NCBI GenBank assembly: GCA_002269645.1
Contig: NIVC01000067.1
Span: 248,001 to 312,000 of the forward strand
DNA from: Macrostomum lignano
Lineage: Eukaryota
Length of the DNA: 64,000 nt
Direction: 5' to 3'
Under the pieces are notes generated by a model. It searched no databases, was not told the origin of the DNA, and saw only the letters and a program-made list of their open reading frames with translations. Below are positions 20,301 through 48,389 of the stretch, piece by piece. Each line of letters starts with the position of its first letter. Position 1 is the stretch's first letter. The position numbers and the translations under genes are program-made.

Positions 20301-22019
20301 TGAATTCCCTGCTGCGAATGGCTATCCAACAGAAACTGGCGCTCACCCAGCAGCTGGAGGATCTAGAGATGGAGAAGACTCGCAGGTATGTTGTCAGTCC
20401 GCCGGCGCCTTTGGTGGCCAGCCCGCCTCCGCAGCCGCAGCAGTCGCATTCGGCCGCTGCCGCCGCTGCAGCCGCCGCTTACTTGAATCAGCAGCGGCAT
20501 CACCAGCAGCAGCAGCAGCAGCAGTTTGCCGCAGCCAACCAGGCCGGCATGATGGCGCCAATGCACTTGCAGCATCATCCGTACAGTCTGCATGGCATTC
20601 CACAGTTGCAGCAGCAGCAGCAGTCGATGCAGCGAGCCGGAGCCTCCTCTGCTGCCGGTTCTGTGCATGTAGGTTTCTTTTCAACTGTAATGGGTAGCCT
20701 AATGTGAAGCATCTGGTTAGGAAGTAGCCAATGCTGAAGCATCATTTTAGCCAATCCTGAAGCATCTGGTTAGGGACTAGCCAATCCTGAAACATCTGGT
20801 TAGGGAGTAGCCAATCCTGAAACATCTGGCTAGGGAGTAGCCAATCCTGAAGCATCTGGTTAGGGAGTAGCCAATCCTGAAACATCTGGTTAGGGAGTAG
20901 CCAATCCTGAAGCATCTGGCTAGGGAGTAGCCAATCCTGAAACATCTGGTTAGGGAGTAGCCAATCCTGAAACATCTGGTTAGGGAGTAGCCAATCCTGA
21001 AACATCTGGTTAGGGAGTAGCCAATACTGAAACATCTGGTTAGGGAGTAGCCAATCCTGAAACATCTGGTTAGGGAGTAGCCAATCCTGAAACATCTGGT
21101 TAGGGAGTAGCCAATACTGAAACATCTGGTTAGGGAGTAGCCAATCCTGAAACATCTGGTTAGGGAGTAGCCAATCCTGAAGCATCTGGCTAGGGAGTAG
21201 CCAATCCTGAAACATCTGGTTAGGGAGTAGCCAATCCTGAAACATCTGGTTAGGGAGTAGCCAATACTGAAACATCTGGTTAGGGAGTAGCCAATCCTGA
21301 AACATCTGGTTAGGGAGTAGCCAATCCTGAAGCATCTGGCTAGGGAGTAGCCAATCCTGAAACATCTGGTTAGGGAGTAGCCAATCCTGAAGCATCTGGC
21401 TAGGGAGTAGCCAATCCTGAAACATCTGGTTAGGGAGTAGCCAATCCTGAAACATCTGGTTAGGGAGTAGCCAATCCTGAAGCATCTGGCTAGGGAGTAG
21501 CCAATCCTGAAGCATCTGGTTAGGGAGTAGCCAATCCTGAAGCATCTGGTTAGGGAGTAGCCAATCCTGAAGCATCTGGCTAGGGAGTAGCCAATCCTGA
21601 AGCATCTGGTTAGGGAGTAGCCAATCCTGAAGCATCTGGCTAGGGAGTAGCCAATCCTGAAGCATCTGGTTAGGGAGTAGCCAATCCTGAAACATCTGGT
21701 TAGGGAGTAGCCAATCCTGAAGCATCGGTCAGGAAGTGCTCAGATGCTTCAGATGCTCGAATCCTCAGTGTCCAGCTTCACCCCATAGACACTGTTGCTC
21801 GCACAGTAGCGCACTGCTTTACAGCGCCATCAGCATCAGCACACGTGGAAACGGAGCCGACGAGGCGGAGCAAGAGGCGGGCGTGGAGCCGCCGCCGCCG
21901 CTCGCTCGTCTGCCTTCTGGAAGCAGCAACAACAGCAGCAAAAGCAACAACAACAACAGTCAGATGATGTTGTTAATCCGGATTCTCAATCAGAAAATGG
22001 AGACAACAGTTATTGTTAA
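14692..22019 (+). CDS. BicD: Protein Bicaudal D (dynein cargo adaptor), ~976 aa; coding exons 14692-14907, 16165-16821, 17827-18714, 19694-20668, 21825-22019 (last exon tentative)
   Basis: Exon 1 has [15 protein letters not shown] (BicD N-terminal motif). Exon 2 has ESASREQ...[15 protein letters not shown]. Exon 4 has the conserved C-terminal coiled coil [17 protein letters not shown]...[22 protein letters not shown]...[26 protein letters not shown]. All introns are GT-AG, phase 0 and keep frame. Confidence 0.93.
17000..17380. repeat. (CCAT)n grading to (CTAT)n microsatellite in BicD intron 2
   Basis: Direct inspection. Confidence 0.92.
18760..19590. repeat. 42-bp (variant 39-bp) minisatellite in BicD intron 3
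   Basis: ATTCTATTAGTGATTTCCCCGACTGGAATGATGATTATCAAG repeated ~20 times. Confidence 0.9.
20705..21725. repeat. 30-bp minisatellite in BicD intron 4
   Basis: AACATCTGGTTAGGGAGTAGCCAATCCTGA repeated ~33 times. Confidence 0.93.
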
Positions 22020-22859
22020 TATAGTTAGTGACGCAGTCAACAATCATTAGTTCTAACTATGAGTGTGTTTTAGAGCTCGTGCTAAATAACTTCTCATTAT
22101 GTTTCTAATTAATGAGTCTAATACTGGGCCGTTCGCTAACAATAGAGTGCTTAATAACACGGGTGCGTGATCATTATCCACTTATCAAGTTTTATTCTTT
22201 CTTCAACTTTTTTGTCGTCGCCAGAAACGAAAATCCGGATTAGCAAAGTCGCGCAAATCGGTTATGTCACTTTGCTATGGTCGTCGGAGTTGAAGCTATT
22301 AGTAATAATATATAATACTATGTATATAGCATTGGATTCGAATGACCTTGATTTGTGTACTGGTAGCGTCTGATTCAATCAATTCTTAATAAGATTTTGA
22401 TTGCCGCTATAATAACAGTGGCAAGTTAAATTTTAACTGTTAAATAGGGCTATGACTACTGTTAATAAGTGGTAAAGCGATTTAATACTTGATTTGTTTT
22501 TTTGTGCAGTTGATAAATTAATTCATTGCGGTGGCAATCGAAGCTACAATGAGTAGTGATGAATTTAACAGCTTATAAAAGTAGCCATAAATTTGGCAAT
22601 TATTTTTCTCTCTAACGACCTCCTCTGTCTAAAATTAATATTTTCAGAGACCGCTGTTCTACCAGCAGATGCTGAGGAAGGAGCCGAAGTGAGCGACTGA
22701 TTTTTGTCGATGTCCTACGCTGCCTTAGCCTGCGGCACTTCCAATATTGTAGAAGAGAGGCGACTACTGATAATAAGTATTTTTGCTCCTGCTCTGTGTC
22801 TGCTGTGTACTGCTTGAGAACTGCGTCTTTCCCTCCTACTTGACTCACTGTTTTTATTG

Positions 22860-23500
<641 letters not shown>

Positions 23501-24339
23501 ACGGTTCCCGCATTCACGGTTGCACAGTTCGCTCATTCTTATTTACGTCGAGCTTGGTGATTCCTTAGTTTTTGATCTTTAAACATTCTGCTAACTTATT
23601 TCACAGTCTAACTTTGCGACTGCTTTGCAGACTTGTTTTGTTTGTTAACCTCTAAAATTATTGATAATAACATTAATTATCATGTTATATATTGTTATTT
23701 GTAGTAATAATTTAAAAGTTTACAATTGACTTGAACAGTTTTGCATGTATTAGGCTTGTCAAATTGGTTCAGTCAACCCCTATTTGATATAAATTATGTT
23801 TTCTAATATTTTGTATAAGTATTTAGATAGCAGGATGGATTGTCTCCCTGTACATCCGCTTGTTGGTGTTGCATGATCAATGCCCTTGTCATTAGTACGC
23901 TCTTATATTCTGTTTCTGTATCTAAATTTATTATGTTTTGAGATGTAGATAGCATCAATCAAAATTTGACATTCCCCACAGCTGATGCACTTTGACTGAT
24001 GCTTTATTGAGATTGAGATCAATTAAATAATTTACAATTGAGTGCTTGAAATATTAATTGTAGTTCACGATGTAAGAATTATCTTGTAAGGTGGGGAAGC
24101 TGGATATTATAAAGAGAAACTTTGAGTTAGTTTAGTTAGTAACAAATGTTAGACCGAATGGTGCATTTTTGTTATAATAATCTACATTATTCCTTCGCGT
24201 TTGCCCACTGCTTCATGTAGTTACACATTGCTGAGCTAATATTTTTTATTGATAAATGTTAATCCCCAATTTTCAGATATGTTTTTTAGCTTCCTTATTT
24301 AGCGAATGAAAACAATTCAATGGTCTGTTTGTTCTTTTC

Positions 24340-26250
24340 AAAATAGCAATCTTGAGGTTAAGCAATCCTGATCTCTAGAGGTTAAGCAATCCTGATCTCT
24401 AGAGGTTAAGCAATCCTGATCTCTAGAGCTTAAACAATCCTGATCTCTAGAGGTTAAGCAATCCTGATCTCTAGAGCTTAAACAATCCTGATCTCTAGAG
24501 GTTAAGCAATCCTGATCTCTAGAGCTTAAACAATCCATCTCTAGAGGTTAAGCAATCCTGATATCCAGAGGTTAAGCAATCCTGATATCTAGAAGTTAAG
24601 CAATCCTGATCTCTAGAGGTTAAGCAATCCTGATATCTAGAAGTTAAGCAATCCTGATCTCTAGAAGTTAAGCAATCCTGATCTCTAGAGGTTAAGCAAT
24701 CCTGATCTCTAGAGGTTAAGCAATCCTGATATCTAGAAGTTAAGCAATCCTGATCTCTAGAGGTTAAGCAATCCTGATCTCTAGAAGTTAAGCAATCCTG
24801 ATCTCTAGAGGTTAAGCAATCCTGATCTCTAGAGGTTAAGCAATCCTGATATCTAGAAGTTAAGCAATCCTGATCTCTAGAGGTTAAGCAATCCTGATCT
24901 CTAGAGGTTAAGCAATCCTGATATCCAGAGGTTAAGCAATCCTGATATCTAGAAGTTAAGCAATCCTGATCTCTAGAGGTTAAGCAATCCTGATATCCAG
25001 AGGTTAAGCAATCCTGATCTCTAGAGGTTAAACAATCCTGATCTCTAGAGGTTAAGCAATCCTGATCTCTAGAAGTTAAGCAATCCTGATCTCTAGAGGT
25101 TAAGCAATCCTGATCTCTAGAGGTTAAGCAATCCTGATCTCTAGAGGTTAAGCAATCCTGATCTCTAGAGGTTAAGCAATCCTGATCTCTAGAGGTTAAG
25201 CAATCCTGGTATCTAGAAGTTAAGCAATCCTGATCTCTAGAGGTTAAGCAATCCTGGTATCTAGAGGTTAAGCAATCCTGATCTCTAGAGGTTAAGCAAT
25301 CCTGATCTCTAGAAGTTAAGCAATCCTGATCTCTAGAGGTTAAGCAATCCTGATCTCTAGAGGTTAAGCAATCCTGATCTCTAGAGGTTAAGCAATCCTG
25401 ATCTCTAGAGGTTAAGCAATCCTGATCTCTAGAGGTTAAACAATCCTGATATCTAGAGGTTAAACAATCCTGATCTCTAGAGGTTAAGCAATCCTGATCT
25501 CTAGAGGTTAAGCAATCCTGATCTCTAGAAGTTAAGCAATCCTGATCTCTAGAGGTTAAGCAATCCTGATCTCTAGAGGTTAAGCAATCCTGATCTCTAG
25601 AGGTTAAGCAATCCTGATCTCTAGAGGTTAAGCAATCCTGATCTCTAGAGGTTAAACAATCCTGATCTCTAGAGGTTAAACAATCCTGATATCTAGAGGT
25701 TAAACAATCCTGATCTCTAGAGGTTAAACAATCCTGATCTCTAGAGGTTAAACAATCCTGATCTCTAGAGGTTAAACAATCCTGATATCTAGAGGTTAAA
25801 CAATCCTGATCTCTAGAGGTTAAACAATCCTGATCTCTAGAGGTTAAGCAATCCTGATATCTAGAAGTTAAGCAATCCTGATATCTAGAGGTTAAACAAT
25901 CCTGATCTCTAGAGGTTAAGCAATCCTGATCTCTAGAGGTTAAGCAATCCTGATATCTAGAAGTTAAGCAATCCTGATATCTAGAAGTTAAGCAATCCTG
26001 ATATCTAGAGGTTAAACAATCCTGATCTCTAGAGGTTAAGCAATCCTGATATCTAGAGGTTAAACAATCCTGATCTCTAGAGGTTAAGCAATCCTGATAT
26101 CTAGAGGTTAAGCAATCCTGATATCTACAGGTTAAGCAATCCTGATATCTACAGGTTAAGCAATCCTGATATCCAGAGGTTAAGCAATCCTGATATCTAC
26201 AGGTTAAGCAATCCTGATATCTACAGGTTAAGCAATCACGATCTACAGGT
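24340..26250. repeat. 24-bp minisatellite (CAATCCTGATCTCTAGAGGTTAAG) ~78 copies
   Basis: Direct tandem repetition. Confidence 0.93.
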
Positions 26251-27019
26251 GTTAAAAATATCGATCTAGAGGTTTCAGAGATGTTTCCCAGAATCTTCAA
26301 ACTTTTGACCCATACAGATCCGAAATGCTGCCTCCTGGCTGAGCGACGCTTCATCATTCGATATTGATAACTGAATGTTAGAATCTCGTGTTCCGATAGA
26401 TTTTGCAATATTGCAGTACGTACCTCATAGTAGTAAGCTTTATCTATTACATTGTTTATAACAAAGCTTTTGGCAAATCCAAAGTGCCCCTATTTCATAT
26501 TAGCAGCCAAAGATGTTTCAGATTCCTCCTATTCCTCCTCCGTTATCTCCTATTTTAAATTCTAAAAGCAATCCCTAATGATGGCTGTTCTATCAATACA
26601 CGCCTAATTCATTGTTATTTGCGCAATTATAGATAAGCGCACATTTGCTAAATAGACTACTAAAACTTGAGTATAGAAACCAGTACAGTTCTTGTTCAAC
26701 AAATTTGCAATAATGTATATTATTTATGATTAAAAAACTTGAAAATCTTTTGTGCTTTTTCTATTGAGTCATTTCTTTCAACTGTCATTTCTTTAAGAAT
26801 TCTTTGCAGTTTGACATAATTGGTCAGTCTTTTGTCTTGTTATTTACTCATTCATTTATTATTAGGTTGTCAGCAGGTACTTAACAGTTTTGAGGGGCCA
26901 TCTTGCCTAGTTCGTAAAGATTTTAAGGGAATTCCCTGCAAAAAAATCGCTTGCAAAAGTGTAAAAAATTGCATAATTAAAGAAAAAATATCACTGAAAA
27001 GTGAGAATTTCTTGTTCTA

Positions 27020-27395
27020 AAAATAACCCGGGAAACCATAGCGAAGTGCTTCCTTCGGGCTGTGTAAAGGGAAATCTATCGATTTTGGTTCTAAAAATAG
27101 CACGGAAAACCTTAGTGAGGAACTGCCTTCTAGGTTGTGTAAAGGGAAATCTATCGATTTGGTTCTAAAAATAGCACGGAAAACCTTAGTGAGGAACTGC
27201 CTTCTAGGTTGTGTAAAGGGAAATCTATCGATTTGGTTCTAAAAATAGCACGGAAAACCTTAGTGAGGAACTGCCTTCTGGGCTGTGTAAAGGGAAATCT
27301 ATCGATTTGGTTCTAAAAATAGCACGGAAAACCTTAGCGAATAACTACCTTCTAGGTTGTTAAAAGGGAAATCTATCGATTTTTGTTCTAAAGAT
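27020..27395. repeat. 74-bp tandem repeat, ~5 copies, just upstream of the OGG1 acceptor
   Basis: AAAGGGAAATCTATCG recurs at 27066, 27141, 27215, 27289, 27363. Confidence 0.88.
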
Positions 27396-27481
27396 ACTCT
27401 GAAATGCGTCTAAAAATGGATGAATTATTACTACGATTGTTGTATCTGTGTTATCACTGACTCATATCAATCCGATTCCAG

Positions 27482-29542
27482 TTGAGAAAGCTGAAAAAGG
27501 CGGCGGCAGATGCTGCGCCGAAGGTTTTTGCCAGCTCGAGCAACGCCTGGCACTCGCTCTCCTGTCCGGCTTCCGAGCTGAACCTTGGCGTCACTCTGGC
27601 CTGCGGGCAGAGCTTCCGCTGGCGCCAGCTGGAACAGGAGGGCTACTGGGCCGGGGTTCACGCCGATAAGGTGTGGCTTCTGCGGCGGCCCAGTGAGGCG
27701 TGCATCGAGTTTCAGGTGTGTCGTGATGTGATAGGGACTATTTTATCTTTAGTTGCAACCTGAGATACCAGATCCTGAGATTCCAGATCCTGAGCTTTCA
27801 GATCTTGGGTTTCCAGATCCCGAGATCCCAGATCCTGAGGTCCCAGATCCTGAGATCAAAGATCCTGAGATTCGAGATCCTAAGATCAAAAATCGTGAGA
27901 TCCCAGATCGTGAGATCCCATCTCATCGTGAGATTCCAGATCCTGAGATCCCAGATCCCGCGATTCCAGTTCCTGAGATCAAACAGATATCCTGAGATCA
28001 AAGATCCGGAGTTTCCGGATACTGAGATTTCAGATCCTAAGATAAAAAATCCTGAGATCCCAGATTGTGAGATCCCAGATCCCCAGTCATCGGCTAGTGG
28101 AATCCCAGATCTCCAGCCTGATCACACCCTGACTCCCATATTCTCAGCATTCGCCTGTCCCCTACAATCCGCAGGTCTATCCGCCATCCAGCAGCGCCGC
28201 CTCAGACCAGCAGGTGCTGGAGGACTATCTCCGATTGAACGGTCCCACCCTGGAGAGCCTGTACGCTGGTTGGAGCGCCTCGGACCCGGTGTTCCGCTCA
28301 GTATGCAGCCAGTTCCCTGACGTCCGCGTGCGCCTGTTACGTCAGCAACCGCTGGAGAATTTATTCAGCTTCATCTGCTCGTCTAACAACAATATTGCCC
28401 GGATTAGTCAGCTGGTTGAGAAATTGTGCAAATATTTTGGCCAGCAAATTTGCATTGTTGACGGCCGCGAGTACTATGGCTTTCCCCAGGTGAGCACCGG
28501 GAATCTAGGAGGTTATAGCCTACCCTATCAGCCCTAGGAATCCAGGGCAGCAGCACCCACCACCACATCATCGGTCCCAGGAATCCAGGGCAGCAGCACC
28601 TACCGCCACATCATCAGTCGCGGGAATCCAGGGCAGCAGCACCCACCACCCCATCATCAGTCGCGGGAATCCAGAGCAGCAGCACCTACCACCCCATCAT
28701 CAGTCGCGGGAATCCAGGGCAGCAGCACCCACCACCCCATCATCAGTCGCAGGAATCCAGGGCAGCAGCACCAACACCCCATCATCAGTCGCGGGAATCC
28801 AGGGCAGCAGCACCCACCACCCCATCATCAGTCCCAGGAATCCAGGGCAGCAGCACCCACCACCCCATCATCAGCCCCGGGAATCCAGGGCAGCACCCAC
28901 CACCCCAACAGCTCCACTGTTGCATGCCTCGCGCCTCGCCCCGCCGCTCTGCAGCTGTCGGCCCTGTGCTCACCAGAGGCGGAACCGCGCCTCCGCGAGT
29001 TGGGCTTCGGCTATCGCGCCAAATTTGTAGTCGAGAGCGCCAGGCGGCTGCTCGACCTGGGCGGCGCCGATTGGCTGCACAGCCTGCGCGGCTCGGCGCA
29101 GCCAGACGAGATCCGACGCTGCCTCACCAAAGAATTCACCGGGGTTGGCCGTAAAGTGGCCGATTGCGTCTGCCTGATGTCGCTAGACCAGCTGCACCTG
29201 GTGCCGGTGGATGTGCACGTGATGCGAATCGCTCGCAGCCTGTACGGCCTACCAGCCTGCACAAAGAGCCTGACCGAGTCGGCCTATCAATCAATTAGCG
29301 ACTTCTTCCCCAGCCTGTGGCAGCCGCACGCCGGCTGGGCGCACACCGTCCTGTTCGCTGCAGACTTGGCCAGATTCCAGCATTTGAAGTCGCCCGCCAT
29401 TGTTGATGAGGTCAAGCCGGCGTCATTATCGACTGAGACACCTGCCGACGCCGCCGCTGATGGCGAGGTTGAATCGAAGAAGCTCGAAGCTGAGAGGCCT
29501 CCTGCTAAATCCGGACAGGGAACTAGAAAGCGCAAGAGATAA
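27482..29542 (+). CDS. OGG1: 8-oxoguanine DNA glycosylase/AP lyase; exons 27482-27715, 28175-28489, 28955-29542; no in-frame ATG in the first visible exon
   Basis: ELNLGVTLACGQSFRW, RLLRQQPLENLFSFICSSNNNIARI, LGFGYRAK and the HhH-GPD motif GVGRKVADCVCLMSLD...VPVDVHV (catalytic Lys and Asp present), WAHTVLF, C-terminal RKRKR. Phase-0 GT-AG introns. Confidence 0.95.
27760..28095. repeat. Degenerate 15-bp GATC-rich repeat (GAGATCCCAGATCCT) in OGG1 intron 1
   Basis: Direct inspection. Confidence 0.85.
28535..28910. repeat. 43-bp minisatellite in OGG1 intron 2
   Basis: GGAATCCAGGGCAGCAGCACCCACCACCCCATCATCAGTCGCG ~8 copies. Confidence 0.88.
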
Positions 29543-30284
29543 AGAAGCTCATACTACTTACAGTGGTGCTTGATGCGTTTTTCATCTATGGAACTGAATC
29601 TGCTTGCAATACTCTGCATTTCAACTTGGATATGTTAAAAAAAATTGCTTTTATAGGCAAGCCGGTAGCAAATACATTGGATTTGGCTATTTAGCTGTAA
29701 AGTAGCATCGCAACGTGTTTAGTATGATAAAAAATTTTACCATTAAAAACCCGCATTGCATGTTTTTTTTTTCAATAGCGCAAGAAATACACTACTGGTG
29801 CTTCTAGGTTTGCAGTAGTACACTTGCAGTAGTATTAAGATTAATAAATTACAGCTAAGGATATTAGCAGAGCATCAAAGAAACTAAAGCAATAATTCTT
29901 TCACAAGCTCGAAAAGGCGCATAAGTCTGTCTCAGCCCCGTGAATCCAGTGCAGCACTAGAGCCATCTGTAATCACTAATTGGGTACAGCCAAACTGGTT
30001 GTAATAAAATCGTACAGTGAGTTACTGAACTTGTAGCAGTGTCTCCTACTAATATCAAGCATTGCAAAAATTATCCAGACAGGGTACTATCCAGTATGAT
30101 TATTGAAGTGTATAGAGAATGATTTGAAGCAACTTTCTTTAAGTTGTTTAGACTTAGATGGCAAACCATAACCACAGTTTAAAGACGACTAGGTACTAAA
30201 TCATTAAAGTTGCACACTTGAGTTCTAAATTTAGCTCATACGTAATATGCTAAAGTTGAGACATTAATGTCTCTCTAATATGCT

Positions 30285-31320
30285 TAGAGAGACATTAACC
30301 AACTGAGAATTCAGACCTTACGAGAGACATTAACCAACTGAGAATTGAGACCTCACGAGAGACATTAACCAACTGAGAATTGAGACCTCACGAGAGACAT
30401 TAACCAACTGAGAATTGAGACCTCACGAGAGACATTAACCAACTGAGAATTGAGACCTCACGAGAGACATTAACCAACTGAGAATTGAGACCTCACGAGA
30501 GACATTAACCAACTGAGAATTGAGACCTCACGAGAGACATTAACCAACTGAGAATTCAGACCTTACGAGAGACATTAACCAACTGAGAATTGAGACCTCA
30601 CGAGAGACATTAACCAACTGAGAATTGAGACCTCACGAGAGACATTAACCAACTGAGAATTGAGACCTCACGAGAGACATTAACCAACTGAGAATTGAGA
30701 CCTCACGAGAGACATTAACCAACTGAGAATTGAGACCTCACGAGAGACATGAACCAACTGAGAATTGAGACCTCACGAGAGACATTAACCAACTGAGAAT
30801 TCAGACCTCACGAGAGACATTAACCAACTGAGAATTGAGACCTCACGAGAGACATTAACCAACTGAGAATTGAGACCTCACGAGAGACATTAACCAACTG
30901 AGAATTGAGACCTCACGAGAGACATTAACCAACTGAGAATTGAGACCTCACGAGAGACATTAACCAACTGAGAATTGAGACCTCACGAGAGACATTAACC
31001 AACTGAGAATTGAGACCTCACGAGAGACATTAACCAACTGAGAATTCAGACCTCACGAGAGACATTAACCAACTGAGAATTCAGACCTCACGAGAGACAT
31101 TAACCAACTGTGAATTGAGACCTCACGAGAGACATTAACCAACTGAGAATTGAGACCTCACGAGAGACATTAACCAACTGAGAATTGAGACCTCACGAGA
31201 GACATTAACCAACTGAGAATTGAGACCTCACGAGAGACATTAACCAACTGAGAATTGAGACCTCACGAGAGACATTAGCCAAACGATCCTACGAGAGATC
31301 TTGACCAACTGAGATGCATA
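30285..31320. repeat. 35-bp minisatellite between convergent OGG1 and RBR copy A
   Basis: GAGACATTAACCAACTGAGAATTGAGACCTCACGA ~29 near-identical copies. Confidence 0.93.
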
Positions 31321-34121: not shown

Positions 34122-34909
34122 TTTTACCAAGCTTATCAAGTACAAGTCAAAGGAAAACTTACATGTATTAACTCAGATTGCCAGTTTGACTCAACTAAAA
34201 GCCTGTGTCCTAGCTTTCTCGGTATAAATGCCTTTCTTTGCACAGTTTTCTGGCCTGTTACTAGGTACCATCTGTCTGCTACTGCTAATGTACATTCCAT
34301 TATCAAATAAGACTGTTCGTAGCTCCATAGCTCAAACACAACAAGCTAGGATGTACACTTTAAGAGCCACTACAATCACGGATGTAGGTACAACGATTGT
34401 ACAGCACTGGCGATGTGGGGCAACGCAGCTCTCTTTCCCTGAATTTCTATCGCAGTTCAGATCTGCTGCCCTCCGCTGCAGTGGGGTCACAACGAATCGA
34501 ACCCGGGACCACTGAGCAACCCACCTTAAATACAAGCATATCAACTGCGTACTAACCGCGACCAGTTCTGCTTAACAGATGATTTGAAAAAATGACTAAC
34601 TCAAAGTTTTTTTTTTGAGTGCAAATTTCGACTCGAACTAAAACGCGAATTTTAATGGAATTAAAGACGGTTACAGTTTAATTTATTTATCGCTTTGTCT
34701 CTTGATACACCGGAATATCAATAGTAAAATTCAAGTATGCAAGTACGAGCAGATGCAATTACTTAAAGTCAAACCAAACAGTCAACTAAAAAACTAAAAA
34801 CACACGGGTCACACATGTACAACCGTAACACTTCAAAACTAATAAAAAAATAAAATATTGATTTTTACTTGGGTGATTTTTACTGAAAAACAATTTACTC
34901 GATAATTTG

Positions 34910-37900
34910 CCATCACCAGCCCCCATCTCCCACAGATCCCCAATCTCAGCTCCCATCTCCCACAGATCCCCAATCTCAACTCCCATTTCCCACAGATCCC
35001 CAATCTCAGCTTCCATCTCCCACAGATCCTCAATCTCAGCTCCCGTCTCCCACAGATCCTCAATCTCAGCTTCCATCTCCCACAGATCCTCAATCTCAGC
35101 TCCCGTCTCCCACAGATCCTCAATCTCAGCTCCTATCTCCCACAGATCCCCAATCTCAGCTCCCATCTCCCACAGATCCTCAATCTCAGCTCCCATCTCC
35201 CACAGATCCTCAATCTCAGCTCCTATCTCCCACAGATCCTCAATCTCAGCTCCCATCTCCCACAGATCCCCAATCTCAGCTCCCATCTCCCACAGATCCC
35301 CAATCACAGCTCCCATTTCCCACAGATCCCCAATCTCAGCTTCCATTTCCCACAGATCCCCAATCTCAGCTCCCATCTCCCACAGATCCCCAATCTCAGC
35401 TCCTATCTCCCATAGATCCTCAATCTCAGCTCCCGTCTCCCACAGATCCTCAATCTCAGCTCCTATCTCCCACAGATCCTCAATCTCAGCTCCCATCTCC
35501 CACAGATCCTCAATCTCAGCTCCCATCTCCCACAGATCCTCAATCTCAGCTCCCATCTCCCACAGATCCTCAATCTCAGCTCCCATTTCCCACAGACCCT
35601 CAATCTCAGCTCCCGTCTCCCACAGATCCCCAATCTCAGCTCCCATCTCCCACAGATCCTCAATCTCAGCTCCCATCTCCCACAGATCCTCAATCTCAGC
35701 TCCCATCTCCCACAGATCCCCAATCTCAGCTCCCATACATCCCCAATCTCAGCTCCCATTTTCCACAGATCCCCAATCTCAGCTCCCATTTTCCACAGAT
35801 CCCCAATCTCAGCTCCCATTTCCCACAGATCCCCAATCTCAGCTCCCATTTTCCACAGATCTCCAATCTCAGCTCCCATCTCCCACAGATCCCCAATCTC
35901 AGCTCCCATCTCCCACAGATCCCCAATCTCAGCTCCCATTTTCCACAGATCCCCAATCTCAGCTCCCATTTTCCACAGATCCTCAATCTCAGCTCCCATC
36001 TCCCACAGATCCTCAATCTCAGCTCCCATCTCCCACAGATCCTCAATCTCAGCTCCCATCTCCCACAGATCCCCAATCTCAGCTCCCATACATCCCCAAT
36101 CTCAGCTCCCATACATCCCCAATCTCAGCTCCCATACATCCCCAATCTCAGCTCCCATTTTCCACAGATCCCCAATCTCAGCTCCCATTTCCCACAGATC
36201 CCCAATCTCAGCTCCCATTTCCCACAGATCCCCAATCTCAGCTCCCATTTCCCACAGATCCCCAATCTCAGCTCCCATTTCCCACAGATCCCCAATCTCA
36301 GCTCCCATTTCCCACAGACCCTCAATCTCAGCTCCCATCTCCCACAGATCCCCAATCTCAGCTCCCGTCTCCCACAGATCCCCAATCTCAGCTCCCATCT
36401 CCCACAGATCCTCAATCTCAGCTCCCATCTCCCACAGATCCTCAATCTCAGCTCCCATCTCCCACAGATCCTCAATCTCAGCTCCCATCTCCCACAGATC
36501 CCCAATCTCAGCTCCCATTTCCCACAGATCCCCAATCTCAGCTCCCATTTTCCACAGATCTCCAATCTCAGCTCCCATCTCCCACAGATCCCCAATCTCA
36601 GCTCCCATCTCCCACAGATCCCCAATCTCAGCTCCCATTTTCCACAGATCCCCAATCTCAGCTCCCATTTTCCACAGATCCTCAATCTCAGCTCCCATCT
36701 CCCACAGATCCTCAATCTCAGCTCCCATCTCCCACAGATCCTCAATCTCAGCTCCCATCTCCCACAGATCCCCAATCTCAGCTCCCATACATCCCCAATC
36801 TCAGCTCCCATACATCCCCAATCTCAGCTCCCATTTTCCACAGATCCCCAATCTCAGCTCCCATTTTCCACAGATCCCCAATCTCAGCTCCCATTTCCCA
36901 CAGATCCCCAATCTCAGCTCCCATTTCCCACAGATCCCCAATCTCAGCTCCCATTTCCCACAGATCCCCAATCTCAGCTCCCATTTCCCACAGATCCCCA
37001 ATCTCAGCTCCCATTTCCCACAGACCCTCAATCTCAGCTCCCATCTCCCACAGATCCTCAATCTCAGCTCCCGTCTCCCACAGATCCCCAATCTCAGCTC
37101 CCATCTCCCACAGATCCTCAATCTCAGCTCCCATCTCCCACAGATCCTCAATCTCAGCTCCCATCTCCCACAGATCCTCAATCTCAGCTCCCATCTCCCA
37201 CAGATCCCCAATCTCAGCTCCCATTTCCCACAGATCCCCAATCTCAGCTCCCATTTCCCACAGACCCTCAATCTCAGCTCCCGTCTCCCACAGATCCCCA
37301 ATCTCAGCTCCCATTTTCCACAGATCCCCAATCTCAGCTCCCATTTTCCACAGATCCCCAATCTCAGCTCCCATCTCCCACAGATCCCCAATCTCAGCTC
37401 CCATTTTCCACAGATCCCCAATCTCAGCTCCCATTTTCCACAGATCCCCAATCTCAGCTCCCATTTCCCACAGATCCCCAATCTCAGCTCCCATTTCCCA
37501 CAGATCCCCAATCTCAGCTCCCATTTCCCACAGATCCCCAATCTCAGCTCCCATTTCCCACAGATCCCCAATCTCAGCTCCCATTTCCCACAGACCCTCA
37601 ATCTCAGCTCCCGTCTCCCACAGATCCCCAATCTCAGCTCCCATCTCCCACAGATCCCCAATCTCAGCTCCCATTTCCCACAGATCCCCAATCTCAGCTC
37701 CCATTTCCCACAGATCCCCAATCTCAGCTCCCATTTCCCACAGATCCCCAATCTCAGCTCCCATCTCCCACAGATCCCCAATCTCAGCTCCCATACATCC
37801 CCAATCTCAGCTCCCATACATCCCCAATCTCAGCTCCCATTTTCCACAGATCCCCAATCTCAGCTCCCATTTTCCACAGATCCCCAATCTCAGCTCCCAT

Positions 37901-39075
37901 TTCCCACAGATCCCCAATCTCAGCTCCCATTTCCCACAGATCCCCAATCTCAGCTCCCATTTCCCACAGATCCCCAATCTCAGCTCCCATTTCCCACAGA
38001 TCCCCAATCTCAGCTCCCATTTCCCACAGACCCTCAATCTCAGCTCCCATCTCCCACAGATCCTCAATCTCAGCTCCCGTCTCCCACAGATCCCCAATCT
38101 CAGCTCCCATCTCCCACAGATCCTCAATCTCAGCTCCCATCTCCCACAGATCCTCAATCTCAGCTCCCATCTCCCACAGATCCTCAATCTCAGCTCCCAT
38201 CTCCCACAGATCCCCAATCTCAGCTCCCATTTCCCACAGATCCCCAATCTCAGCTCCCATTTCCCACAGACCCTCAATCTCAGCTCCCGTCTCCCACAGA
38301 TCCCCAATCTCAGCTCCCATTTTCCACAGATCCCCAATCTCAGCTCCCATTTTCCACAGATCCCCAATCTCAGCTCCCATCTCCCACAGATCCCCAATCT
38401 CAGCTCCCATTTTCCACAGATCCCCAATCTCAGCTCCCATTTTCCACAGATCCCCAATCTCAGCTCCCATTTCCCACAGATCCCCAATCTCAGCTCCCAT
38501 TTCCCACAGATCCCCAATCTCAGCTCCCATTTCCCACAGATCCCCAATCTCAGCTCCCATTTCCCACAGATCCCCAATCTCAGCTCCCATTTCCCACAGA
38601 CCCTCAATCTCAGCTCCCGTCTCCCACAGATCCCCAATCTCAGCTCCCATCTCCCACAGATCCCCAATCTCAGCTCCCATTTCCCACAGATCCCCAATCT
38701 CAGCTCCCATTTCCCACAGATCCCCAATCTCAGCTCCCATTTCCCACAGACCCTCAATCTCAGCTCCCGTCTCCCACAGATCCCCAATCTCAGCTCCCAT
38801 CTCCCACAGATCCCCAATCTCAGCTCCTATCTCCCACAGATCCTCAATCTCAGCTCCCGTCTCCCACAGATCCCCAAACTCAGCTCCCATCTCCCACAGA
38901 TCCCCAATCTCAGCTCCCATCTCCCACAGATCCCCAATCTCAGCTCCCATCTCCCACAGATCCTCAATCTCAGCTCCCATCTCCCACAGACCCTCAATCT
39001 CAGCTCCCATCTCCCACAGATCCCCAATCTCAGCTCCCATTTCCCACAGATCCTCAATCTCATACAGATCTCCCA
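34910..39075. repeat. 30-bp minisatellite (CAGCTCCCATCTCCCACAGATCCCCAATCT), ~4.1 kb, with higher-order structure, between the two RBR genes
   Basis: Direct tandem repetition; 23-bp deletion variants mark a 1006-bp higher-order period. Confidence 0.95.
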
Positions 39076-39150
39076 TTACCAGCTCCATCAAGTGTTCCAT
39101 CTCAAAGTCTTTATTCTCCGCCGCATCAGTCACGCCAGCAGAGATGCGCC

Positions 39151-42100
39151 TCACTCCCCGGGAACCTCGGTTTGCCTCGGTGCCACAGCGCATGGCTCCC
39201 TGTAGCTGCCGCACTGCCAGTTGCCCCTGTCGTTCTTCGGCTTCAAGCAGATGAAGCAGAACTCTTGGTCGCAGACGCACTTCATGTGCTTGCAGGCGGT
39301 CACGTGCTCGATGATCATGCCGCACTTGATGCAGGCGCGGCGGCCGGGCACGTCTGGAGACGAGATTATGGTTATAAAAATTGCACTTTAACGCTACTTT
39401 AACGAGTCTGTTGTTATTCCATGAGAATTTCGAATGGCACAGGTTTAGGTTTATAAAGAATTGCTAATTGCCCCGGTGACCTACCGGGCACGCCGACGAT
39501 CGTCTTGACCTTCGCCGCGGCCAGAATGGCGATCCGAGGGTCCTTGCCCGAGCAGATGTCGTTGCCGCACTTGGTCGTGCCCGGGGTGCGCCACTTGTTC
39601 AAGCAGTACCAGCAGAACTCGAACAGCCGCCCCTTGTCCGGCTCCGAGCACACCGGACAGATCATTCGGCGATCGCGACCGCTGCGGCGCTGGCAGAACG
39701 ACCTGCAGCCTGGGCACTCCTGCGGGGTTGAGAGCGAGTCTGAGTGTGTTAGTGTCTATCTGTCTGTCCGGGTGTCCATCTGTCTGTCTGTCTGTCCGGG
39801 TGTCCATCTGTCTGTCTGTCTGTCCGGGTGTCCATCTGTTTGTCTGGGTGTGTTAGTGTCTATCTGTCTGTCCGGGTGTCCATCTGTCTGTCTGTCTTTC
39901 CGGGTGTCCATCTGTCTGTCTGTCTGTCCGGGTGTCCATCTGTCTATCTGTCTGTCCGGGTGTCCATCTGTCTGTCTGTCTGTCCGGGTGTCCATCTGTC
40001 TGTCTGAGTGTGTTAGTGTCTATCTGTCTGTCCGGGTGTCCATCTGTCTGTCTGTCTGTCCGGGTGTCCATCTGTCTATCTGTCTGTCCGGGTGTCCATC
40101 TGTCTGTCTGTCTGTCCGGGTGTCCATCTGTCTGTCTGTCTGTCCGGGTGTCTATCTGTCTGTCTGGGTGTGTTAGTGTCTATCTGTCTGTCCGGGTGTC
40201 CATCTGTCTGTCTGTCTGTCCGGGTGTCCATCTGTCTGTCTGGGTGTGTTAGTGTCTATCTGTCTGTCCGGGTGTCCATCTGTCTGTCTGTCTGTCCGGG
40301 TGTCCATCTGTCTGTCTGAGTGTGTTAGTGTCTATCTGTCTGTCCGGGTGTCCATCTGTCTGTCTGTCTGTCCGGGTGTCCATCTGTCTGTCTGAGTGTG
40401 TTAGTGTCTATCTGTCTGTCCGGGTGTCCATCTGTCTTTCTGGGTGTCTCAGTGTCCATCTGTCTGTCTAAGTGTCTCAGTGTCCATCTGTCTGAATGCC
40501 TTAGTGCCCATCTATTTGGATGTCTTAGTGTCCATTTGGAAGTCTTAGTGTCCATTTGGATGTCTTAGTGTCCATCTGGGTGTCTTAGTGTCCATTTGGG
40601 TGTCTTAGTGTCCATTTGGATGTTTTAGTGTCCATTTGGGTGTCTTAGTGTCCATTTGGATGTCTTAGTATCCATTTGGGTGTCTTAGTGTCCATTTGGG
40701 TGTCTTAGTGTCCATTTGGGTGTCTTAGTGTCCATTTGAGTGTCTTAGTGTCCATTTGGGTGTCTTAGTGTCCATTTGGGTGTCTTAGTGTCCATTTGGG
40801 TGTCTTAGTGTCCATCTGGGTGTCTTAGTGTCCATTTGGGTGTCTTAGTGTCCATTTGGAAGTCTTAGTATCCATTTGGATGTCTTAGTGTCCATCTGGG
40901 TGTCTTAGTGTCCATTTGGGTGTCTTAGTGTCCATTTGGATGTTTTAGTGTCCATTTGGGTGTCTTAGTGTCCATTTGGATGTCTTAGTATCCATTTGGG
41001 TGTCTTAGTGTCCATTTGGGTGTCTTAGTGTCCATTTGGGTGTCTTAGTGTCCATTTGAGTGTCTTAGTGTCCATTTGGATGTCTTAGTATCCATTTGGA
41101 TGTCTTAGTGTCCATTTGGAAGTCTTAGTGTCCATCTGGGTGTCTTAGTGTCCATTTGGATGTCTGGGTGTCTGGTTGTCTGTCTGTGTGTTTTTGTACC
41201 TTTTGTAGCGTTTCTCTGCCATTACTTACCTGAATATTGACCGTCCGTCGCAGGTAGTTCTCAGAGATTTTGCGCTCAAACTCGCGCTTCTCAGCGTCGG
41301 TGAGCACGGCCAGCCGTCGCACGATCACGAAGTCCCACTCGGCGGGGCAGCCGACGCCCGCGTTGGCGGGGTCCACCCAGGGGCAGAGGAACCGGTAGCG
41401 CCCTGTGTCCAGCAGACTGTGGCAATAGCTGGTGAGGCTGTCCGGGCCGATGGCGTGGCCGCAGGGCATCTTCGCCCGCTTGCCGTCCTTGTCATCGTCC
41501 CAGGTGATCATGTCCGGCAGGTCGGTGAGCTCAACGCAGTCGTCTAGCTCCTGTGAGCACACAATTTTTCCTGGTCCGTGAGATTCTCTGGCTAGAACTT
41601 TTCTACCTTCTCTCAACAGGATTCCCCCACCGGGATTCTGCCACCGGGATTCTCCCACCGGGATTCTGCCACCGGGATTCTCCCACAGGGATTCTCCTAA
41701 CGGGATTCTGCCACCCGGATTCTGCCACCGGAGTTATCGCACCGGGATTCTCCCAACCGGAGTTATCCCACCGGGATTCTCCCACCGGAGTTATCCCACC
41801 GGGTTCTCCCACCGGGATTCTCCCACCGGAGTTATCCCACCGGGATTCTCCCACCTGAATTTTCCTACCGAGATTCTCCCTTTGGCACGTGGCGTCGGAG
41901 GGTGCTCTCGCTTCGCAGTGAACTCACCTTGGATCCGCCGTGCAGACGCAGCACCATGAAGAGATTGGAGTGATTCTCCAGGTGAAACTCGGTCAGGTGC
42001 TTGTCCTTGTGCTGCTCAAAGTCGATAGTCTTGCTCACGTAGACCATCTGGTAGGCACCCGGCTTGAGTCCTGTCTTATCCTCCAGCTTGCGAAACAGAT

Positions 42101-46085: not shown

Positions 46086-48389
46086 TCACTGAGCGGCGCC
46101 CGAAGCGGAGGCGGCGGTGGCGGCTGCGCTGCTCCGCTGTTTGAGCAGAGTCCAGTCAAAGGTGTAGTCGAACTGGTGATTGAGAGTGCGGAACAGGATC
46201 CGGAAGAGCTGTCTGAGGTACATATAGTCGGGAGCCTCCTCGAATCGAAGGCCGCGGCAATAGTTCAAGTACATGGTGAACTCGGCCGGGAAGCCTTTGC
46301 ACAGGGACTCGACTGGCGTTGACATCTTCTTCTCGCTGATCTTCTGGTACTTCTGCTTCTTGGTGTTGGCCTGCGGTTGGGAGTTATGGGAATTGAGGCT
46401 TTGGGATTGGGAATTAAGATAGTATATAGTGATGAACTGTGAGACATAAGCTATGAGCCGGGATTTATGAGCTATGATTTATTACCAATGATCATGGATT
46501 AATGAACTATGACCATAGATCTATGAGCTATGACCATGGATTTATGACCAATGACCATGGATTTATGACCAATGATCATGGATTAATAAACTATGACCAT
46601 AGATCTATGAGCTTTGACCATACATTTATGAGCTATGATCATAGATCTATGAGCTATGACCATGGATTTATGACCAATGACCATGGATTTATGACCAATG
46701 ACCATGGATTTATGACCAATGATCATGGATTAATGAACTATGACCATAGATCTATGAGCTATGACCATGGATTTATGACCAATGACCATGGATTTATGAC
46801 CAATGATCATGGATTAATAAACTATGACCATAGATCTATGAGCTTTGACCATACATTTATGAGCTATGATCATAGATCTATGAGCTATGACCATGGATTT
46901 ATGACCAATGACCATGGATTTATGACCAATGACCATGGATTTATGACCAATGATCATGGATTAATAAACTATGACCATAGATCTATGAGCTTTGACCATA
47001 CATTTATGAGCTATGATCATAGATCTATGAGCTATGACCATGGATTTATGACCAATGACCATGGATTTATGACCAATGACCATGGATTTATGACCAATGA
47101 TCATGGATTAATAAACTATGACCATAGATCTATGAGCTTTGACCATACATTTATGAGCTATGATCATAGATCTATGAGCTATGACCATGGGTTTTCTAGC
47201 CATGACCATAGATAAAAGCTATGAGCAATGGAGATGAGCAATAATCGGTGAATATGAAGCAACGTAGATGAATGAAACAAAGCCGCAAAGGATTTCACCT
47301 GCAGTCCCTGCCACGGTAGCGAGCCCCTATTAAAGTACATCAGCACGTAGCCAAGCGCTTCCATGTCATCGCGTCTGGACTGTTCGATGCCCAGGTGAGC
47401 ATTGATTGAAGCGTAGCGGGCCGTGCCAGTGAGGTTTTTGTCCTCGCTGCGGGAATTGAGTTCGGGACATTTTATACCAGACTAATCCATTAATCATTTT
47501 TAAATAACAGATCTCTTGATGACTAATCATATGCTCACCGGTAAGGGATGTGCTTTCCGGAACGACTATCGCGAAACTTTTTAGCCAATCCGAAGTCAAT
47601 GATGAACACCTGGCGCGGGCGGGCGGAAATCGATTTATAGGATTTCTTAGTTAAGGGATTAAGATTCTTCAATGGGAATAAGGAATTCGGATTATTGGGT
47701 TGGGACTTGGATTATTGCATTGGGGATTTGGGTTATTGGGTTTGGGATTTGGATTATTGGGTTAAGGACTTGGATTATTGCATTGGGGATTTGGGTTATT
47801 GGGTTGAGGATTTGGATTATTGGGTTGGGGATTTGGGTTATTGGGTTGGGGATTTGGATTATTGTGTTGGGGATTTGGGTTATTGGGTTGGGGATTTGGA
47901 TTATTGTGTTGGGGATTTGGGTTATTGGGTTGGGGATTTGGATTATTGTGTTGGGGATTTGGATTATTGGGTTGGGGATTTGGATTATTGTGTTGGGGAT
48001 TTGGATAATTGGGTTGGGGATTGGGATTTTTGGTTAAGGATTGGGGATAATTAAGCTGGGGAATGGGATTATTTGCACCCTCAGACTCACCTTGTTGCAG
48101 TGACGCCCGATTCCCATGAGGAAGTTGTCCGGCTTGATGTCGCGGTGAATGAAGTTTTTGTTGTGCACGTACTCGATGCGGTTGATCATCTGGTCGGCCA
48201 GCATCAGCACGGTCTTCATAGTGAACCGGCGAGAGCAGAAGCTGAACAGGTCCTCCAGGCTGGGGCCCAGCAGGTCCATCACCAGCACGTTGTAGTCCTT
48301 CTCTACACCGAACCAGCTGCGTGGGCGGGGAGACAGAGTGGGCACGGGTTCAGGACAATGGACAGGAAGTGTCAGGCAGACAGACAGAC

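What the first reader, a model, noticed from the sequence alone, without database searches (positions are those of the whole stretch)
27456..27520. OGG1 has no start codon: likely supplied by the terminal AUG of a trans-spliced leader
Seen: the OGG1 frame opens right after an acceptor (branch-like CTGAC ~27457, ...GATTCCAG|TTGAGAAAG at 27482). There is an in-frame TGA at 27458-27460, and the first ATG in the exon is out of frame. The upstream exon-like candidates I tested (22648-22688, 26279 onward) do not join in frame. Known: flatworm spliced leaders end in AUG, which can act as the initiator Met. Inference: SL-AUG+TTG gives M-L-R-K-L-K-K-A..., making translation of a DNA-repair enzyme dependent on trans-splicing at this exact AG.
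Basis: partly seen in the sequence, partly recalled or inferred. Interest (0 to 1): 0.7.

Follow-up and report, generated by a model that had tools for sequence, protein, structure and literature searches.

The report
OGG1 start codon supplied by spliced leader
This flatworm (Macrostomum lignano) DNA-repair gene OGG1 has no start codon of its own and almost certainly borrows the AUG at the end of the trans-spliced leader, a mechanism known in flatworms since 2006, so this is a correct but fairly ordinary example.

Summary
The window is Macrostomum lignano (assembly Mlig_3_7) and the gene is OGG1 copy Mlig027060.g2. Its first coding exon starts at 27482, just after a TTCCAG acceptor. An in-frame TGA lies 24 nt upstream. 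No in-frame ATG occurs before residue 258, which is past the catalytic lysine.

- The M. lignano spliced leader (SL) ends in ATG.
- The acceptor fits the published trans-splice motif YTNCAG.
- SL-ATG plus exon 1 gives MLRKLKK..., collinear with full-length human OGG1 to within one residue.
- GenBank and UniProt models of all three gene copies are 5'-partial and begin at this AG, in an annotation that cut transcripts at peaks of SL-bearing reads.
- No upstream ATG exon with a consensus donor exists.

One result was unexpected. In the other two copies the assembly reads TCATG and GCATG where this copy has TCCAG, and each changed base is the SL base. That assembly was polished with RNA-seq, and a protein model from the older ML2 assembly still reads TTCCAG. 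I read these changes as polishing scars left by SL-OGG1 junction reads.

No junction read was seen directly. The mechanism is already known (Cheng et al. 2006), so this is a new member of a known kind and of low to moderate interest.

The parts
22648..22692 (+). Last coding exon of the upstream same-strand gene BicD (…RPLFYQQMLRKEPK*). The stop TGA is at 22690-22692, and a GTGAG donor-like site starts at 22689.
   Evidence: The GenBank BicD CDS ends at L003:5208, which is window 22692.
22693..27481 (+). Intergenic region, or outron, upstream of OGG1. About 2.9 kb of it is tandem arrays: TGTC x160, a 24-mer x79 and a 74-mer x5. It holds no phase-0 ATG exon with a GTRAG donor.
27457..27461 (+). 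Branch-point-like CTGAC. Its A at 27460 lies 21 nt upstream of the acceptor G at 27481.
   Evidence: It is identical in all three gene copies. The function is inferred.
27458..27460 (+). In-frame TGA that closes the OGG1 frame 24 nt upstream of the exon.
27476..27481 (+). Trans-splice acceptor TTCCAG (AG at 27480-27481).
   Evidence: It matches the M. lignano trans-splice motif [T/C]TNCAG (PMC8629364). The annotated mRNA/CDS 5' ends of the three copies fall at or 3 nt after the next base.
27482..27715 (+). OGG1 exon 1 (LRKLKKAAADAAPKVF…IEFQ). It has no in-frame ATG and becomes MLRKLKK… once the SL AUG is added.
27485..27486 (+). Alternative AG 5 nt downstream. An SL joined here would be out of frame (61-codon ORF). 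An older gene model (P0126) used it to fuse BicD to OGG1 in frame.
27510..27581 (+). First genomic ATG of the mRNA. It is in the +1 frame and opens a 23-codon ORF plus stop (MLRRRFLPARATPGTRSPVRLPS*).
27716..28174 (+). Intron 1 (GTGTGT…CGCAG), mostly a 15-mer tandem array.
28175..28489 (+). OGG1 exon 2.
   Evidence: The spliced protein is identical to PAA91979.1.
28490..28954 (+). Intron 2 (GTGAGC…CTGCAG), mostly a 43-mer tandem array.
28955..29542 (+). OGG1 exon 3, coding part. It holds the catalytic Lys motif GVGRKVADC, Asp in PVDVH and a C-terminal RKRKR. The stop TAA is at 29540-29542.
29843..29848 (+). AATAAA, the likely OGG1 polyadenylation signal, about 300 nt after the stop.
   Evidence: Inferred only.

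Best explanation
The OGG1 pre-mRNA of this M. lignano copy (Mlig027060.g2) starts somewhere upstream. It has either its own promoter in the repeat-rich 4.8 kb upstream, or it is a read-through from BicD.

The spliceosome joins the 35-nt spliced leader (SL), donated by the 109-nt SL RNA, to the TTCCAG acceptor. The upstream part of the pre-mRNA (the outron) is discarded.

The mature mRNA therefore begins cap-CGGUCUCUUACUGCGAAGACUCAAUUUAUUGCAUG|UUGAGAAAG…. The SL's last three bases are the first AUG of the message, 33 nt from the cap, and they are in frame with OGG1. Translation starts there and gives a 379-aa 8-oxoguanine DNA glycosylase, MLRKLKKAAAD….

Without trans-splicing at this exact AG, no AUG can open the frame before the catalytic domain.

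Shown here: the sequence anatomy, the frame, the identity of organism and gene, the fit to the acceptor motif, and the annotated 5' ends. Inferred: the splicing event itself and initiation at the SL AUG.
For: 1. The window is M. lignano, and the spliced CDS equals PAA91979.1.

2. The SL ends in ATG (PMC8629364). Authors working on Macrostomum genomes note that this ATG is a likely start codon (PMC10468722). The flatworm SL AUG is an established initiator (Cheng et al. 2006, as described in PMC9851317, PMC12582326 and PMC3510090).

3. The acceptor TTCCAG fits [T/C]TNCAG.

4. There is an in-frame stop 24 nt upstream. No in-frame ATG occurs until residue 258, and the first ATG of the exon is out of frame.

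5. With the SL Met the N-terminus is collinear with human OGG1 (query residue 15 = human residue 14). The distance to the GQSFRW motif is 42 residues, against 20-80 in 110 full-length homologues.

6. GenBank models of the three copies start at L or R of LRKLKK and are flagged partial. Two independent UniProt models (P0123, P0124) also start at LRKLKK. The GenBank annotation used the TBONE pipeline, which cuts transcripts at peaks of SL-trimmed reads.

7. In copies g3 and g1 the assembly reads CCAATTCATG|TTG and CCAATGCATG|TTG, against CCGATTCCAG|TTG here. Positions -2, -3 and (in g1) -5 carry exactly the SL base, nested outward from the junction. Mlig_3_7 was Pilon-polished with RNA-seq. The ML2-derived protein P0125 is identical to g1 over 332 aa and reads SIQFQ|LRK, which corresponds to TTCCAG. 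The simplest reading is that SL-bearing reads ending …GCATG|TTGAGAAAG overwrote the genome. That is indirect evidence for the junction.

8. None of the 23 upstream phase-0 ATG exon candidates has a GTRAG donor.

9. The CDS is intact in all copies. Exons are about 99% identical against about 96% for the loci overall, and dN/dS is 0.13-0.31. The gene is therefore under coding constraint and must be translated from somewhere.
Against: - No SL-junction read, cDNA or peptide was seen here. The 90% protein cluster has no transcriptome-derived member, and the other searches gave nothing.
- The GenBank CDS of this copy starts at 27485 (R), not 27482.
- SL-trimmed reads multi-map among the three copies, so the annotation cannot say which copy is trans-spliced.
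- If the ATG in the two paralogues is real rather than a polishing scar, the organism would have two OGG1 copies with their own start codon. The dependence on trans-splicing would then be copy-specific.
- The context of the SL AUG (U at -3, U at +4) is weak by vertebrate rules.
- dN/dS rests on only 11-14 substitutions.
Confidence: 0.8

Rival explanations
1. Start-codon loss. The ancestral gene had a genomic ATG just before TTG, as the assembly shows for copies g1 and g3. In this copy ATG mutated to CAG. The copy would then be an untranslated or poorly translated duplicate, and the perfect acceptor would be a coincidence.
For: The Mlig_3_7 assembly reads CATG|TTG in two of the three copies. 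M. lignano carries duplicated chromosomes, so a redundant copy could decay. Adjacent double substitutions between copies are not rare.
Against: The ML2-derived model P0125 is g1-type at every diagnostic residue and at -8, yet it reads TTCCAG. The ML2 g3-type model P0002 places a splice acceptor at the same AG. In g1 a third change (-5 T>G) also matches the SL, which start-codon selection does not explain. The assembly was polished with RNA-seq. The CDS of this copy is intact, with dN/dS about 0.3. The resulting hexamer matches the trans-splice motif exactly.
Confidence: 0.07
2. A cis-spliced upstream exon supplies the start. One example is a BicD-OGG1 fusion that uses the GTGAG donor at 22689 and the AG at 27485-27486, as in the older model P0126. 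Another would be an unannotated 5' exon.
For: The join 22688 to 27487 is in frame and the donor is consensus. The older annotation predicted BicD-OGG1 fusions (P0002, P0126). Flatworm acceptors are often shared between cis- and trans-splicing (PMC12582326).
Against: The RNA-seq-based annotation separates the two genes and leaves OGG1 5'-partial in all three copies. The fusion models come from the indel-rich ML2 assembly and contain frameshifted stretches. No other phase-0 ATG exon with a GTRAG donor exists in the 4.8 kb upstream. The OGG1 N-terminus is already full length relative to its orthologues. Splicing the same donor to 27482 gives an immediate stop.
Confidence: 0.05
3. Non-AUG initiation on an mRNA that is not trans-spliced. 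Translation would start at a near-cognate codon such as CTG 27491 (A at -3) or TTG 27482.
For: In-frame CTG and TTG codons exist at the 5' end of exon 1. Near-cognate initiation is documented in eukaryotes (PMC9851317).
Against: An unspliced 5' region carries an in-frame upstream ORF (ATG 27416 to TGA 27460) and the out-of-frame ATG at 27510. The annotated transcript 5' ends sit exactly at an AG, which is what processing produces and not what a transcription start looks like. The organism has an efficient AUG-ending SL.
Confidence: 0.04
4. Assembly error in this window. The true sequence of this copy would have ATG at 27479-27481, and the CAG would be a consensus mistake.
For: The two paralogues read ATG in the same assembly.
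Against: PacBio consensus errors are mostly indels, not two adjacent substitutions that create a canonical motif. ML2-derived models of the other copies also imply CAG. This copy has private SNPs at -64, -8 and +58, which make DNA reads uniquely mappable and its polishing reliable.
Confidence: 0.03

Closest known systems
Flatworm mRNAs that use the SL 3'-terminal AUG as initiator methionine (Cheng, Cohen, Ndegwa & Davis 2006, J Biol Chem 281:733; called 'slORFs' in PMC9851317)
   Same: The SL ends in AUG and the acceptor sits directly in front of an ORF that lacks its own AUG. The SL AUG is in frame and is needed for an N-terminus that matches the orthologues. This is the same logic as the >40 S. 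mansoni cDNAs, the 35 S. japonicum genes and the E. granulosus clusters that need the SL AUG.
   Different: The species is different: a free-living basal flatworm, where use of the SL AUG has only been mentioned in passing (PMC10468722). The gene is also different (OGG1). No experimental junction or translation data were available to me.
SL trans-spliced genes of M. lignano (Wudarski et al. 2017; Ustyantsev & Berezikov 2021)
   Same: It shares the YTNCAG acceptor, the 35-nt SL and gene boundaries defined by SL reads. It is a conserved housekeeping or repair gene, the class reported as enriched among trans-spliced genes.
   Different: Those papers do not discuss SL-AUG-dependent ORFs. SL trimming that removes the ATG leaves such genes annotated as 5'-partial.
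Animal OGG1 (human OGG1, e.g. PDB 1KO9)
   Same: OGG_N plus HhH-GPD domains. The catalytic Lys (GVG-x-KVADC) and Asp (PVDVH) are conserved. The alignment is collinear from residue 15 to 332.
   Different: The start codon is not encoded in the gene. There is a basic N-terminal stretch MLRKLKK and a C-terminal RKRKR. Possible roles in targeting are inference only.
Downstream genes of SL-resolved operons (C. elegans; M. lignano operons)
   Same: An upstream gene (BicD) lies on the same strand and the downstream gene begins at a trans-splice acceptor. Older models fused the two, as happens with polycistronic precursors.
   Different: The distance from the BicD stop to the OGG1 acceptor is 4.8 kb, or about 1.9 kb after subtracting tandem arrays. 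The published criterion is <1 kb. The end of the BicD 3' UTR is unknown.

Membership tests
SL-AUG-initiated flatworm mRNA (Cheng et al. 2006 class) | The organism has an SL RNA whose leader ends in AUG. | tested here: met
   The organism was identified as M. lignano by 100% identical proteins. Its SL is …TTATTGCATG (PMC8629364). No SL RNA gene lies in this window.
SL-AUG-initiated flatworm mRNA (Cheng et al. 2006 class) | [quoted passage not shown] | tested here: met
   TTCCAG|TTG fits [T/C]TNCAG. None of the 23 upstream phase-0 ATG exon candidates has a GTRAG donor. The only consensus donor nearby overlaps the BicD stop codon and gives a stop when joined to 27482.
SL-AUG-initiated flatworm mRNA (Cheng et al. 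2006 class) | SL-bearing transcripts are joined at that acceptor. | tested here: inconclusive
   The evidence is indirect only. Annotated 5' ends fall at the AG in two independent annotations. SL bases sit at -2, -3 and -5 of the two paralogues in an RNA-seq-polished assembly. No read or cDNA was accessible.
SL-AUG-initiated flatworm mRNA (Cheng et al. 2006 class) | The SL AUG is in frame with the main ORF, and no other in-frame AUG can give a functional protein. | tested here: met
   SL plus exon 1 translates to MLRKLKK…. The next in-frame Met codons are at 258 and 273, after the catalytic Lys. The first genomic ATG is in the +1 frame.
SL-AUG-initiated flatworm mRNA (Cheng et al. 2006 class) | The N-terminus matches the orthologues only if the SL Met is used. 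| tested here: met
   Query residue 15 aligns with human OGG1 residue 14. The OGG_N profile is covered from position 2. The length of the N-terminus lies within the range of 110 homologues.
SL-AUG-initiated flatworm mRNA (Cheng et al. 2006 class) | Translation is demonstrated to initiate at the SL AUG. | not testable with these tools
   This needs ribosome profiling, N-terminal proteomics or a reporter.
OGG1 / 8-oxoguanine DNA glycosylase | OGG_N and HhH-GPD domains, with the catalytic Lys and Asp. | tested here: met
   PF07934 scores 74 bits (cut-off 23) and PF00730 scores 45 bits (cut-off 26). GVGRKVADC and PVDVH align with human K249 and D268.
Downstream gene of an M. lignano operon | A same-strand upstream gene lies at a repeat-adjusted distance below 1 kb (Ustyantsev & Berezikov 2021). 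| tested here: inconclusive
   BicD is upstream on the same strand. The distance from stop to acceptor is 4,789 nt. Subtracting 2,915 nt of tandem arrays leaves about 1.9 kb. The BicD 3' UTR and transposon content are unknown.

The most novel reading that the evidence does not exclude
The SL-like bases in front of the two paralogous OGG1 copies (TCATG, GCATG) could be real and not polishing artefacts. A short tract of SL-bearing OGG1 cDNA would then have been copied back into the genome, or selection would have fixed CAG>ATG. Either way the borrowed SL AUG would have been hard-wired as a genomic start codon in two copies, while this copy keeps the trans-splicing-dependent state. That would be a snapshot of start codons moving between the SL and the gene within one genome.
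Probability: 0.1. Interest if true: 0.7.

Novelty: new member of a known kind. Interest (0 to 1): 0.3.

Why it matters
The biology is a clean example of a known flatworm peculiarity: a conserved DNA-repair enzyme whose translation is hostage to trans-splicing at one AG.

Its practical value lies in annotation.
- In M. lignano, SL trimming that removes the terminal ATG leaves such genes as '5' partial, hypothetical protein' in GenBank and UniProt, here in all three OGG1 copies.
- Older predictors compensated by inventing BicD-OGG1 fusions.
- The likely polishing scars suggest that the Mlig_3_7 reference may carry false genomic ATGs, and destroyed AG acceptors, at trans-splice sites of duplicated genes.

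This could bias motif statistics and gene models, and it would affect promoter or 5'-end design for transgenesis in this model organism.

Tried and rejected
- The 90% protein cluster holds only 7 GenBank/UniProt members and none from transcriptome assemblies.
- A second homologue search with the N-terminal 134 aa returned nothing, not even the known protein. I take this as a limit of the index, not as a result.
- An exact scan of metagenome contigs for the SL-OGG1 junction found nothing, as expected.
- The gene id does not occur in the papers or supplements that are held.

2. ML2 assembly DNA could not be fetched for P0002 or P0125. The ML2 state of the acceptor is therefore inferred from protein models only.

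3. I looked for more SL scars or genomic SL copies.
- TTGCATG is not enriched in the window (13 matches against 11.9 expected).
- The 8-nt SL-suffix match at 29755-29762 is a chance match, because the paralogues read ATTACATG there.
- The neighbouring IBR genes start with ordinary genomic ATGs.
- The scar idea could not be tested at a second trans-splice site.

4. An attempt to obtain the GenBank BicD proteins and their paralogous loci failed. Only a UniProt fragment was returned.

5. A single-ORF look-up of 46502-47215 found no annotated gene. That ORF lies inside a 21-mer tandem array.

6. The idea that the 35 nt upstream of the exon are a decayed genomic SL copy (retrogene) was dropped. Similarity to the SL is confined to the last 5 bases in g1 and g3, and the gene has introns.

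7. Rfam found no RNA gene in the window.
Full report
**What the window is.** The spliced reading frame at 27482-29542 is 100% identical to GenBank PAA91979.1, 'hypothetical protein BOX15_Mlig027060g2, partial [Macrostomum lignano]'. The window lies on scaffold NIVC01000067.1 of assembly Mlig_3_7, GCA_002269645.1.

The protein is a typical OGG1.
- Pfam OGG_N covers residues 27-142 and HhH-GPD covers 144-295.
- The match to human OGG1 structures has E = 7e-80, and the catalytic Lys and Asp motifs are conserved.
- The gene has three coding exons: 27482-27715, 28175-28489 and 28955-29542.
- Both introns are largely filled with minisatellites.
- Upstream on the same strand lies BicD, whose CDS ends at 22692. 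Downstream on the other strand lie IBR-domain genes.

**The observation.**
- The AG is at 27480-27481, inside TTCCAG.
- The exon starts at 27482 with TTG AGA AAG.
- An in-frame TGA lies at 27458-27460, so only seven non-Met codons could be added upstream.
- The first ATG, at 27510, is in the +1 frame and opens a 23-codon ORF.
- I add that the only in-frame Met codons of the whole CDS are residues 258 and 273, beyond the catalytic lysine. No internal AUG could give an active enzyme.
- The candidate upstream exon 22648-22688 is the last BicD exon. Its GTGAG donor overlaps the BicD stop codon, and joining it to 27482 gives AAT TGA.
- In the remaining 4.8 kb there are 23 ATG…|GT candidates that would join in phase 0. 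None has the species' donor consensus GT[G/A]AG.

**Does the organism have the required spliced leader (SL)?** Yes.
- M. lignano has one 35-nt SL, CGGTCTCTTACTGCGAAGACTCAATTTATTGCATG. It comes from a 109-nt SL RNA with a GTAAG donor.
- About 30% of the species' genes are trans-spliced, and the top motif at trans-splice acceptors is [T/C]TNCAG (PMC8629364).
- TTCCAG fits that motif.
- Joining the SL at 27482 puts its terminal AUG, the first AUG of the mRNA, in frame. The product is MLRKLKKAAADAAPKVF….
- With that Met, residue 15 aligns with residue 14 of full-length human OGG1.
- The distance to the conserved GQSFRW motif is 42 residues, within the 20-80 range of 110 Met-initiated homologues. 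Nothing is missing from the N-terminus.
- An SL joined at the next AG (27485-27486) would be out of frame.

**Annotation evidence.**
- The assembly holds three OGG1 copies (g1, g2, g3), and all are flagged 'partial'. Their proteins begin RKLKK (g1, g2) or LRKLKK (g3).
- Two UniProt models from the older ML2 assembly also begin LRKLKK.
- In locus L001 the CDS begins exactly at the T of TTG.
- The GenBank annotation derives from the TBONE pipeline, which trimmed the SL from reads, mapped them, and cut transcripts at the resulting peaks (PMC5730564).
- A 5' end that falls directly after an AG, in two annotation efforts, is what a trans-splice site looks like.
- Trimming the SL together with its ATG explains why the ORFs are left 5'-partial. 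The authors of the M. cliftonense and M. hystrix genomes note this problem and kept the ATG for that reason (PMC10468722).

**An unexpected result in the paralogues.** I fetched the other two copies (L001 = g3, L002 = g1) and aligned the junction. Positions -10 to -1 read as follows:

| Sequence | -10 to -1 |
|---|---|
| g2 (this window) | CCGATTCCAG |
| g3 | CCAATTCATG |
| g1 | CCAATGCATG |
| SL | TTATTGCATG |

Taken at face value, two of the three copies have a genomic ATG exactly where the SL AUG would be, and they have no AG acceptor.

- Within 60 nt on either side of the junction, the differences among copies are -8, +58 and these positions: -2 and -3 in both g1 and g3, plus -5 in g1. At -2, -3 and -5, the base in g1 or g3 is the SL base.
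- The pattern is nested outward from the junction.
- A rough count puts the chance of three random substitutions doing this at about 1e-6. The changes are therefore causally linked to the SL.

Two explanations remain.

(a) *A polishing artefact.*
- Mlig_3_7 was polished with Pilon using Illumina DNA reads and RNA-seq mapped by STAR (PMC5730564). Reads that begin a few bases inside the SL would overhang the acceptor and vote for SL bases.
- The UniProt model P0125, built on the earlier ML2 assembly, is identical to g1 over 332 residues including its private substitutions. It has the g1/g3 base at -8, yet it reads SIQFQ|LRK, which corresponds to TTC CAG.
- The ML2 g3-type model P0002 places a splice acceptor at the same AG.
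- g1 and g3 are identical from -73 to +158 apart from -5, so short DNA reads cannot be assigned between them and would carry little weight. g2 has private SNPs at -64, -8 and +58. This would explain why only g2 escaped. That last step is my inference.

(b) *Real biology.* This would be cDNA-mediated conversion or selection for a genomic ATG. I give it about 0.1.

Either way, the pattern implies that RNAs reading …GCAUG|UUGAGAAAG exist. I could not test the scar idea at a second trans-splice site.

**Is the copy functional?**
- All three CDSs are intact at 1137 nt.
- Exons are 98-99% identical, while the loci overall differ by about 4% (g2 against g1 or g3) and about 2% (g1 against g3).
- dN/dS is 0.26-0.31 for g2 against the others. 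This is based on few substitutions, so it is weak but consistent evidence of constraint.

**Relation to BicD.**
- The older ML2 models P0002 and P0126 fuse BicD exons to OGG1. P0126 uses the donor at 22689 and the AG at 27485-27486.
- I regard these as predictor work-arounds for the missing ATG. They may have been prompted by polycistronic precursor transcripts, which are common in this species.
- The published operon criterion is a repeat-adjusted distance below 1 kb.
- Here the distance from stop to acceptor is 4,789 nt, of which 2,915 nt are tandem arrays. Operon membership is therefore undecided.

**Comparison with what is known.**
- Use of the flatworm SL 3'-terminal AUG as initiator Met was demonstrated by Cheng et al. 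2006. The AUG was in frame in 28% of S. mansoni trans-spliced transcripts, and more than 40 cDNAs required it (as summarised in PMC9851317).
- It has been extended to S. japonicum and E. granulosus, where 143 of 187 SL clusters are full length with the SL ATG and several require it (PMC3510090).
- All reported flatworm SLs end in ATG (PMC12582326).
- This OGG1 gene meets every sequence-level criterion of that class. The junction itself is only indirectly supported, and initiation at the SL AUG is untested.
- I found no paper that describes SL-AUG-dependent genes in M. lignano specifically, or OGG1 in any flatworm.

**Verdict.**
My probability that the SL AUG is the start codon of this mRNA is about 0.8.
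- Novelty: a new member of a known kind.
- Interest is low to moderate (0.3). Its main value is as an annotation and assembly-quality lesson: 5'-partial models, spurious fusions and probable SL scars in the reference.

Noticed in passing
L001:9998-9999 and L002:9993-9996 (paralogous OGG1 copies g3 and g1), equivalent to window 27477-27480: The assembly of the two paralogues reads TCATG and GCATG where this window has TCCAG. Every changed base equals the SL base, and the acceptor AG is destroyed. Mlig_3_7 was Pilon-polished with RNA-seq, and an ML2-derived protein model of g1 still implies TTCCAG. This is probably a general artefact, false genomic ATGs at trans-splice sites, though I have shown it only at this one site.
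   Followed up: partly
window 22686-22693: The BicD stop codon (TGA at 22690-22692) overlaps a consensus GTGAG donor that starts at 22689. Spliced to OGG1's acceptor at 27482 it would give BicD …EPN*. Spliced to the AG at 27485-27486 it gives an in-frame BicD-OGG1 fusion, as predicted in UniProt A0A1I8I2L8 (P0126).
   Followed up: partly
whole window, e.g. 34917-39062, 24350-26244, 20748-21737, 30287-31282, 55520-56653: About twenty long minisatellite arrays with periods of 15-43 nt fill introns and intergenic DNA. Examples are 140 copies of a 30-mer and 79 copies of a 24-mer. They produce long spurious ORFs in several frames (e.g. 34907-39205, 1432 codons) and strong local GC skew.
   Followed up: partly
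window 29763-29772: A T10 run lies about 220 nt after the OGG1 stop. Both paralogues read TTTTATTATTATTTTA-type sequence there instead (6-nt length difference). It could be ordinary variation, or a poly(A)-read polishing effect for a minus-strand transcript. Unresolved.
   Followed up: no
window 27416-27460: In the outron, an upstream ORF (ATG GAT GAA … CAC TGA, 14 codons) is in frame with OGG1 and ends at the in-frame TGA. It would be removed by trans-splicing and would hinder translation of any unspliced transcript.
   Followed up: no
OGG1 protein termini (window 27482-27550 and 29519-29539): The N-terminus MLRKLKKAAADAAPKVFASSS is basic and rich in Ala and Ser. It sits where human OGG1 is, to my knowledge, reported to carry its mitochondrial targeting signal. 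The C-terminus ends in RKRKR, which looks like a nuclear localisation signal. Dual targeting is a guess from composition only.
   Followed up: no
window 46476-47213: The 237-codon ATG ORF at 46502-47215, with weak zf-C2H2_2 Pfam hits, lies entirely inside a 21-mer/147-mer tandem array. It is not an annotated gene, so it is probably not a gene.
   Followed up: partly
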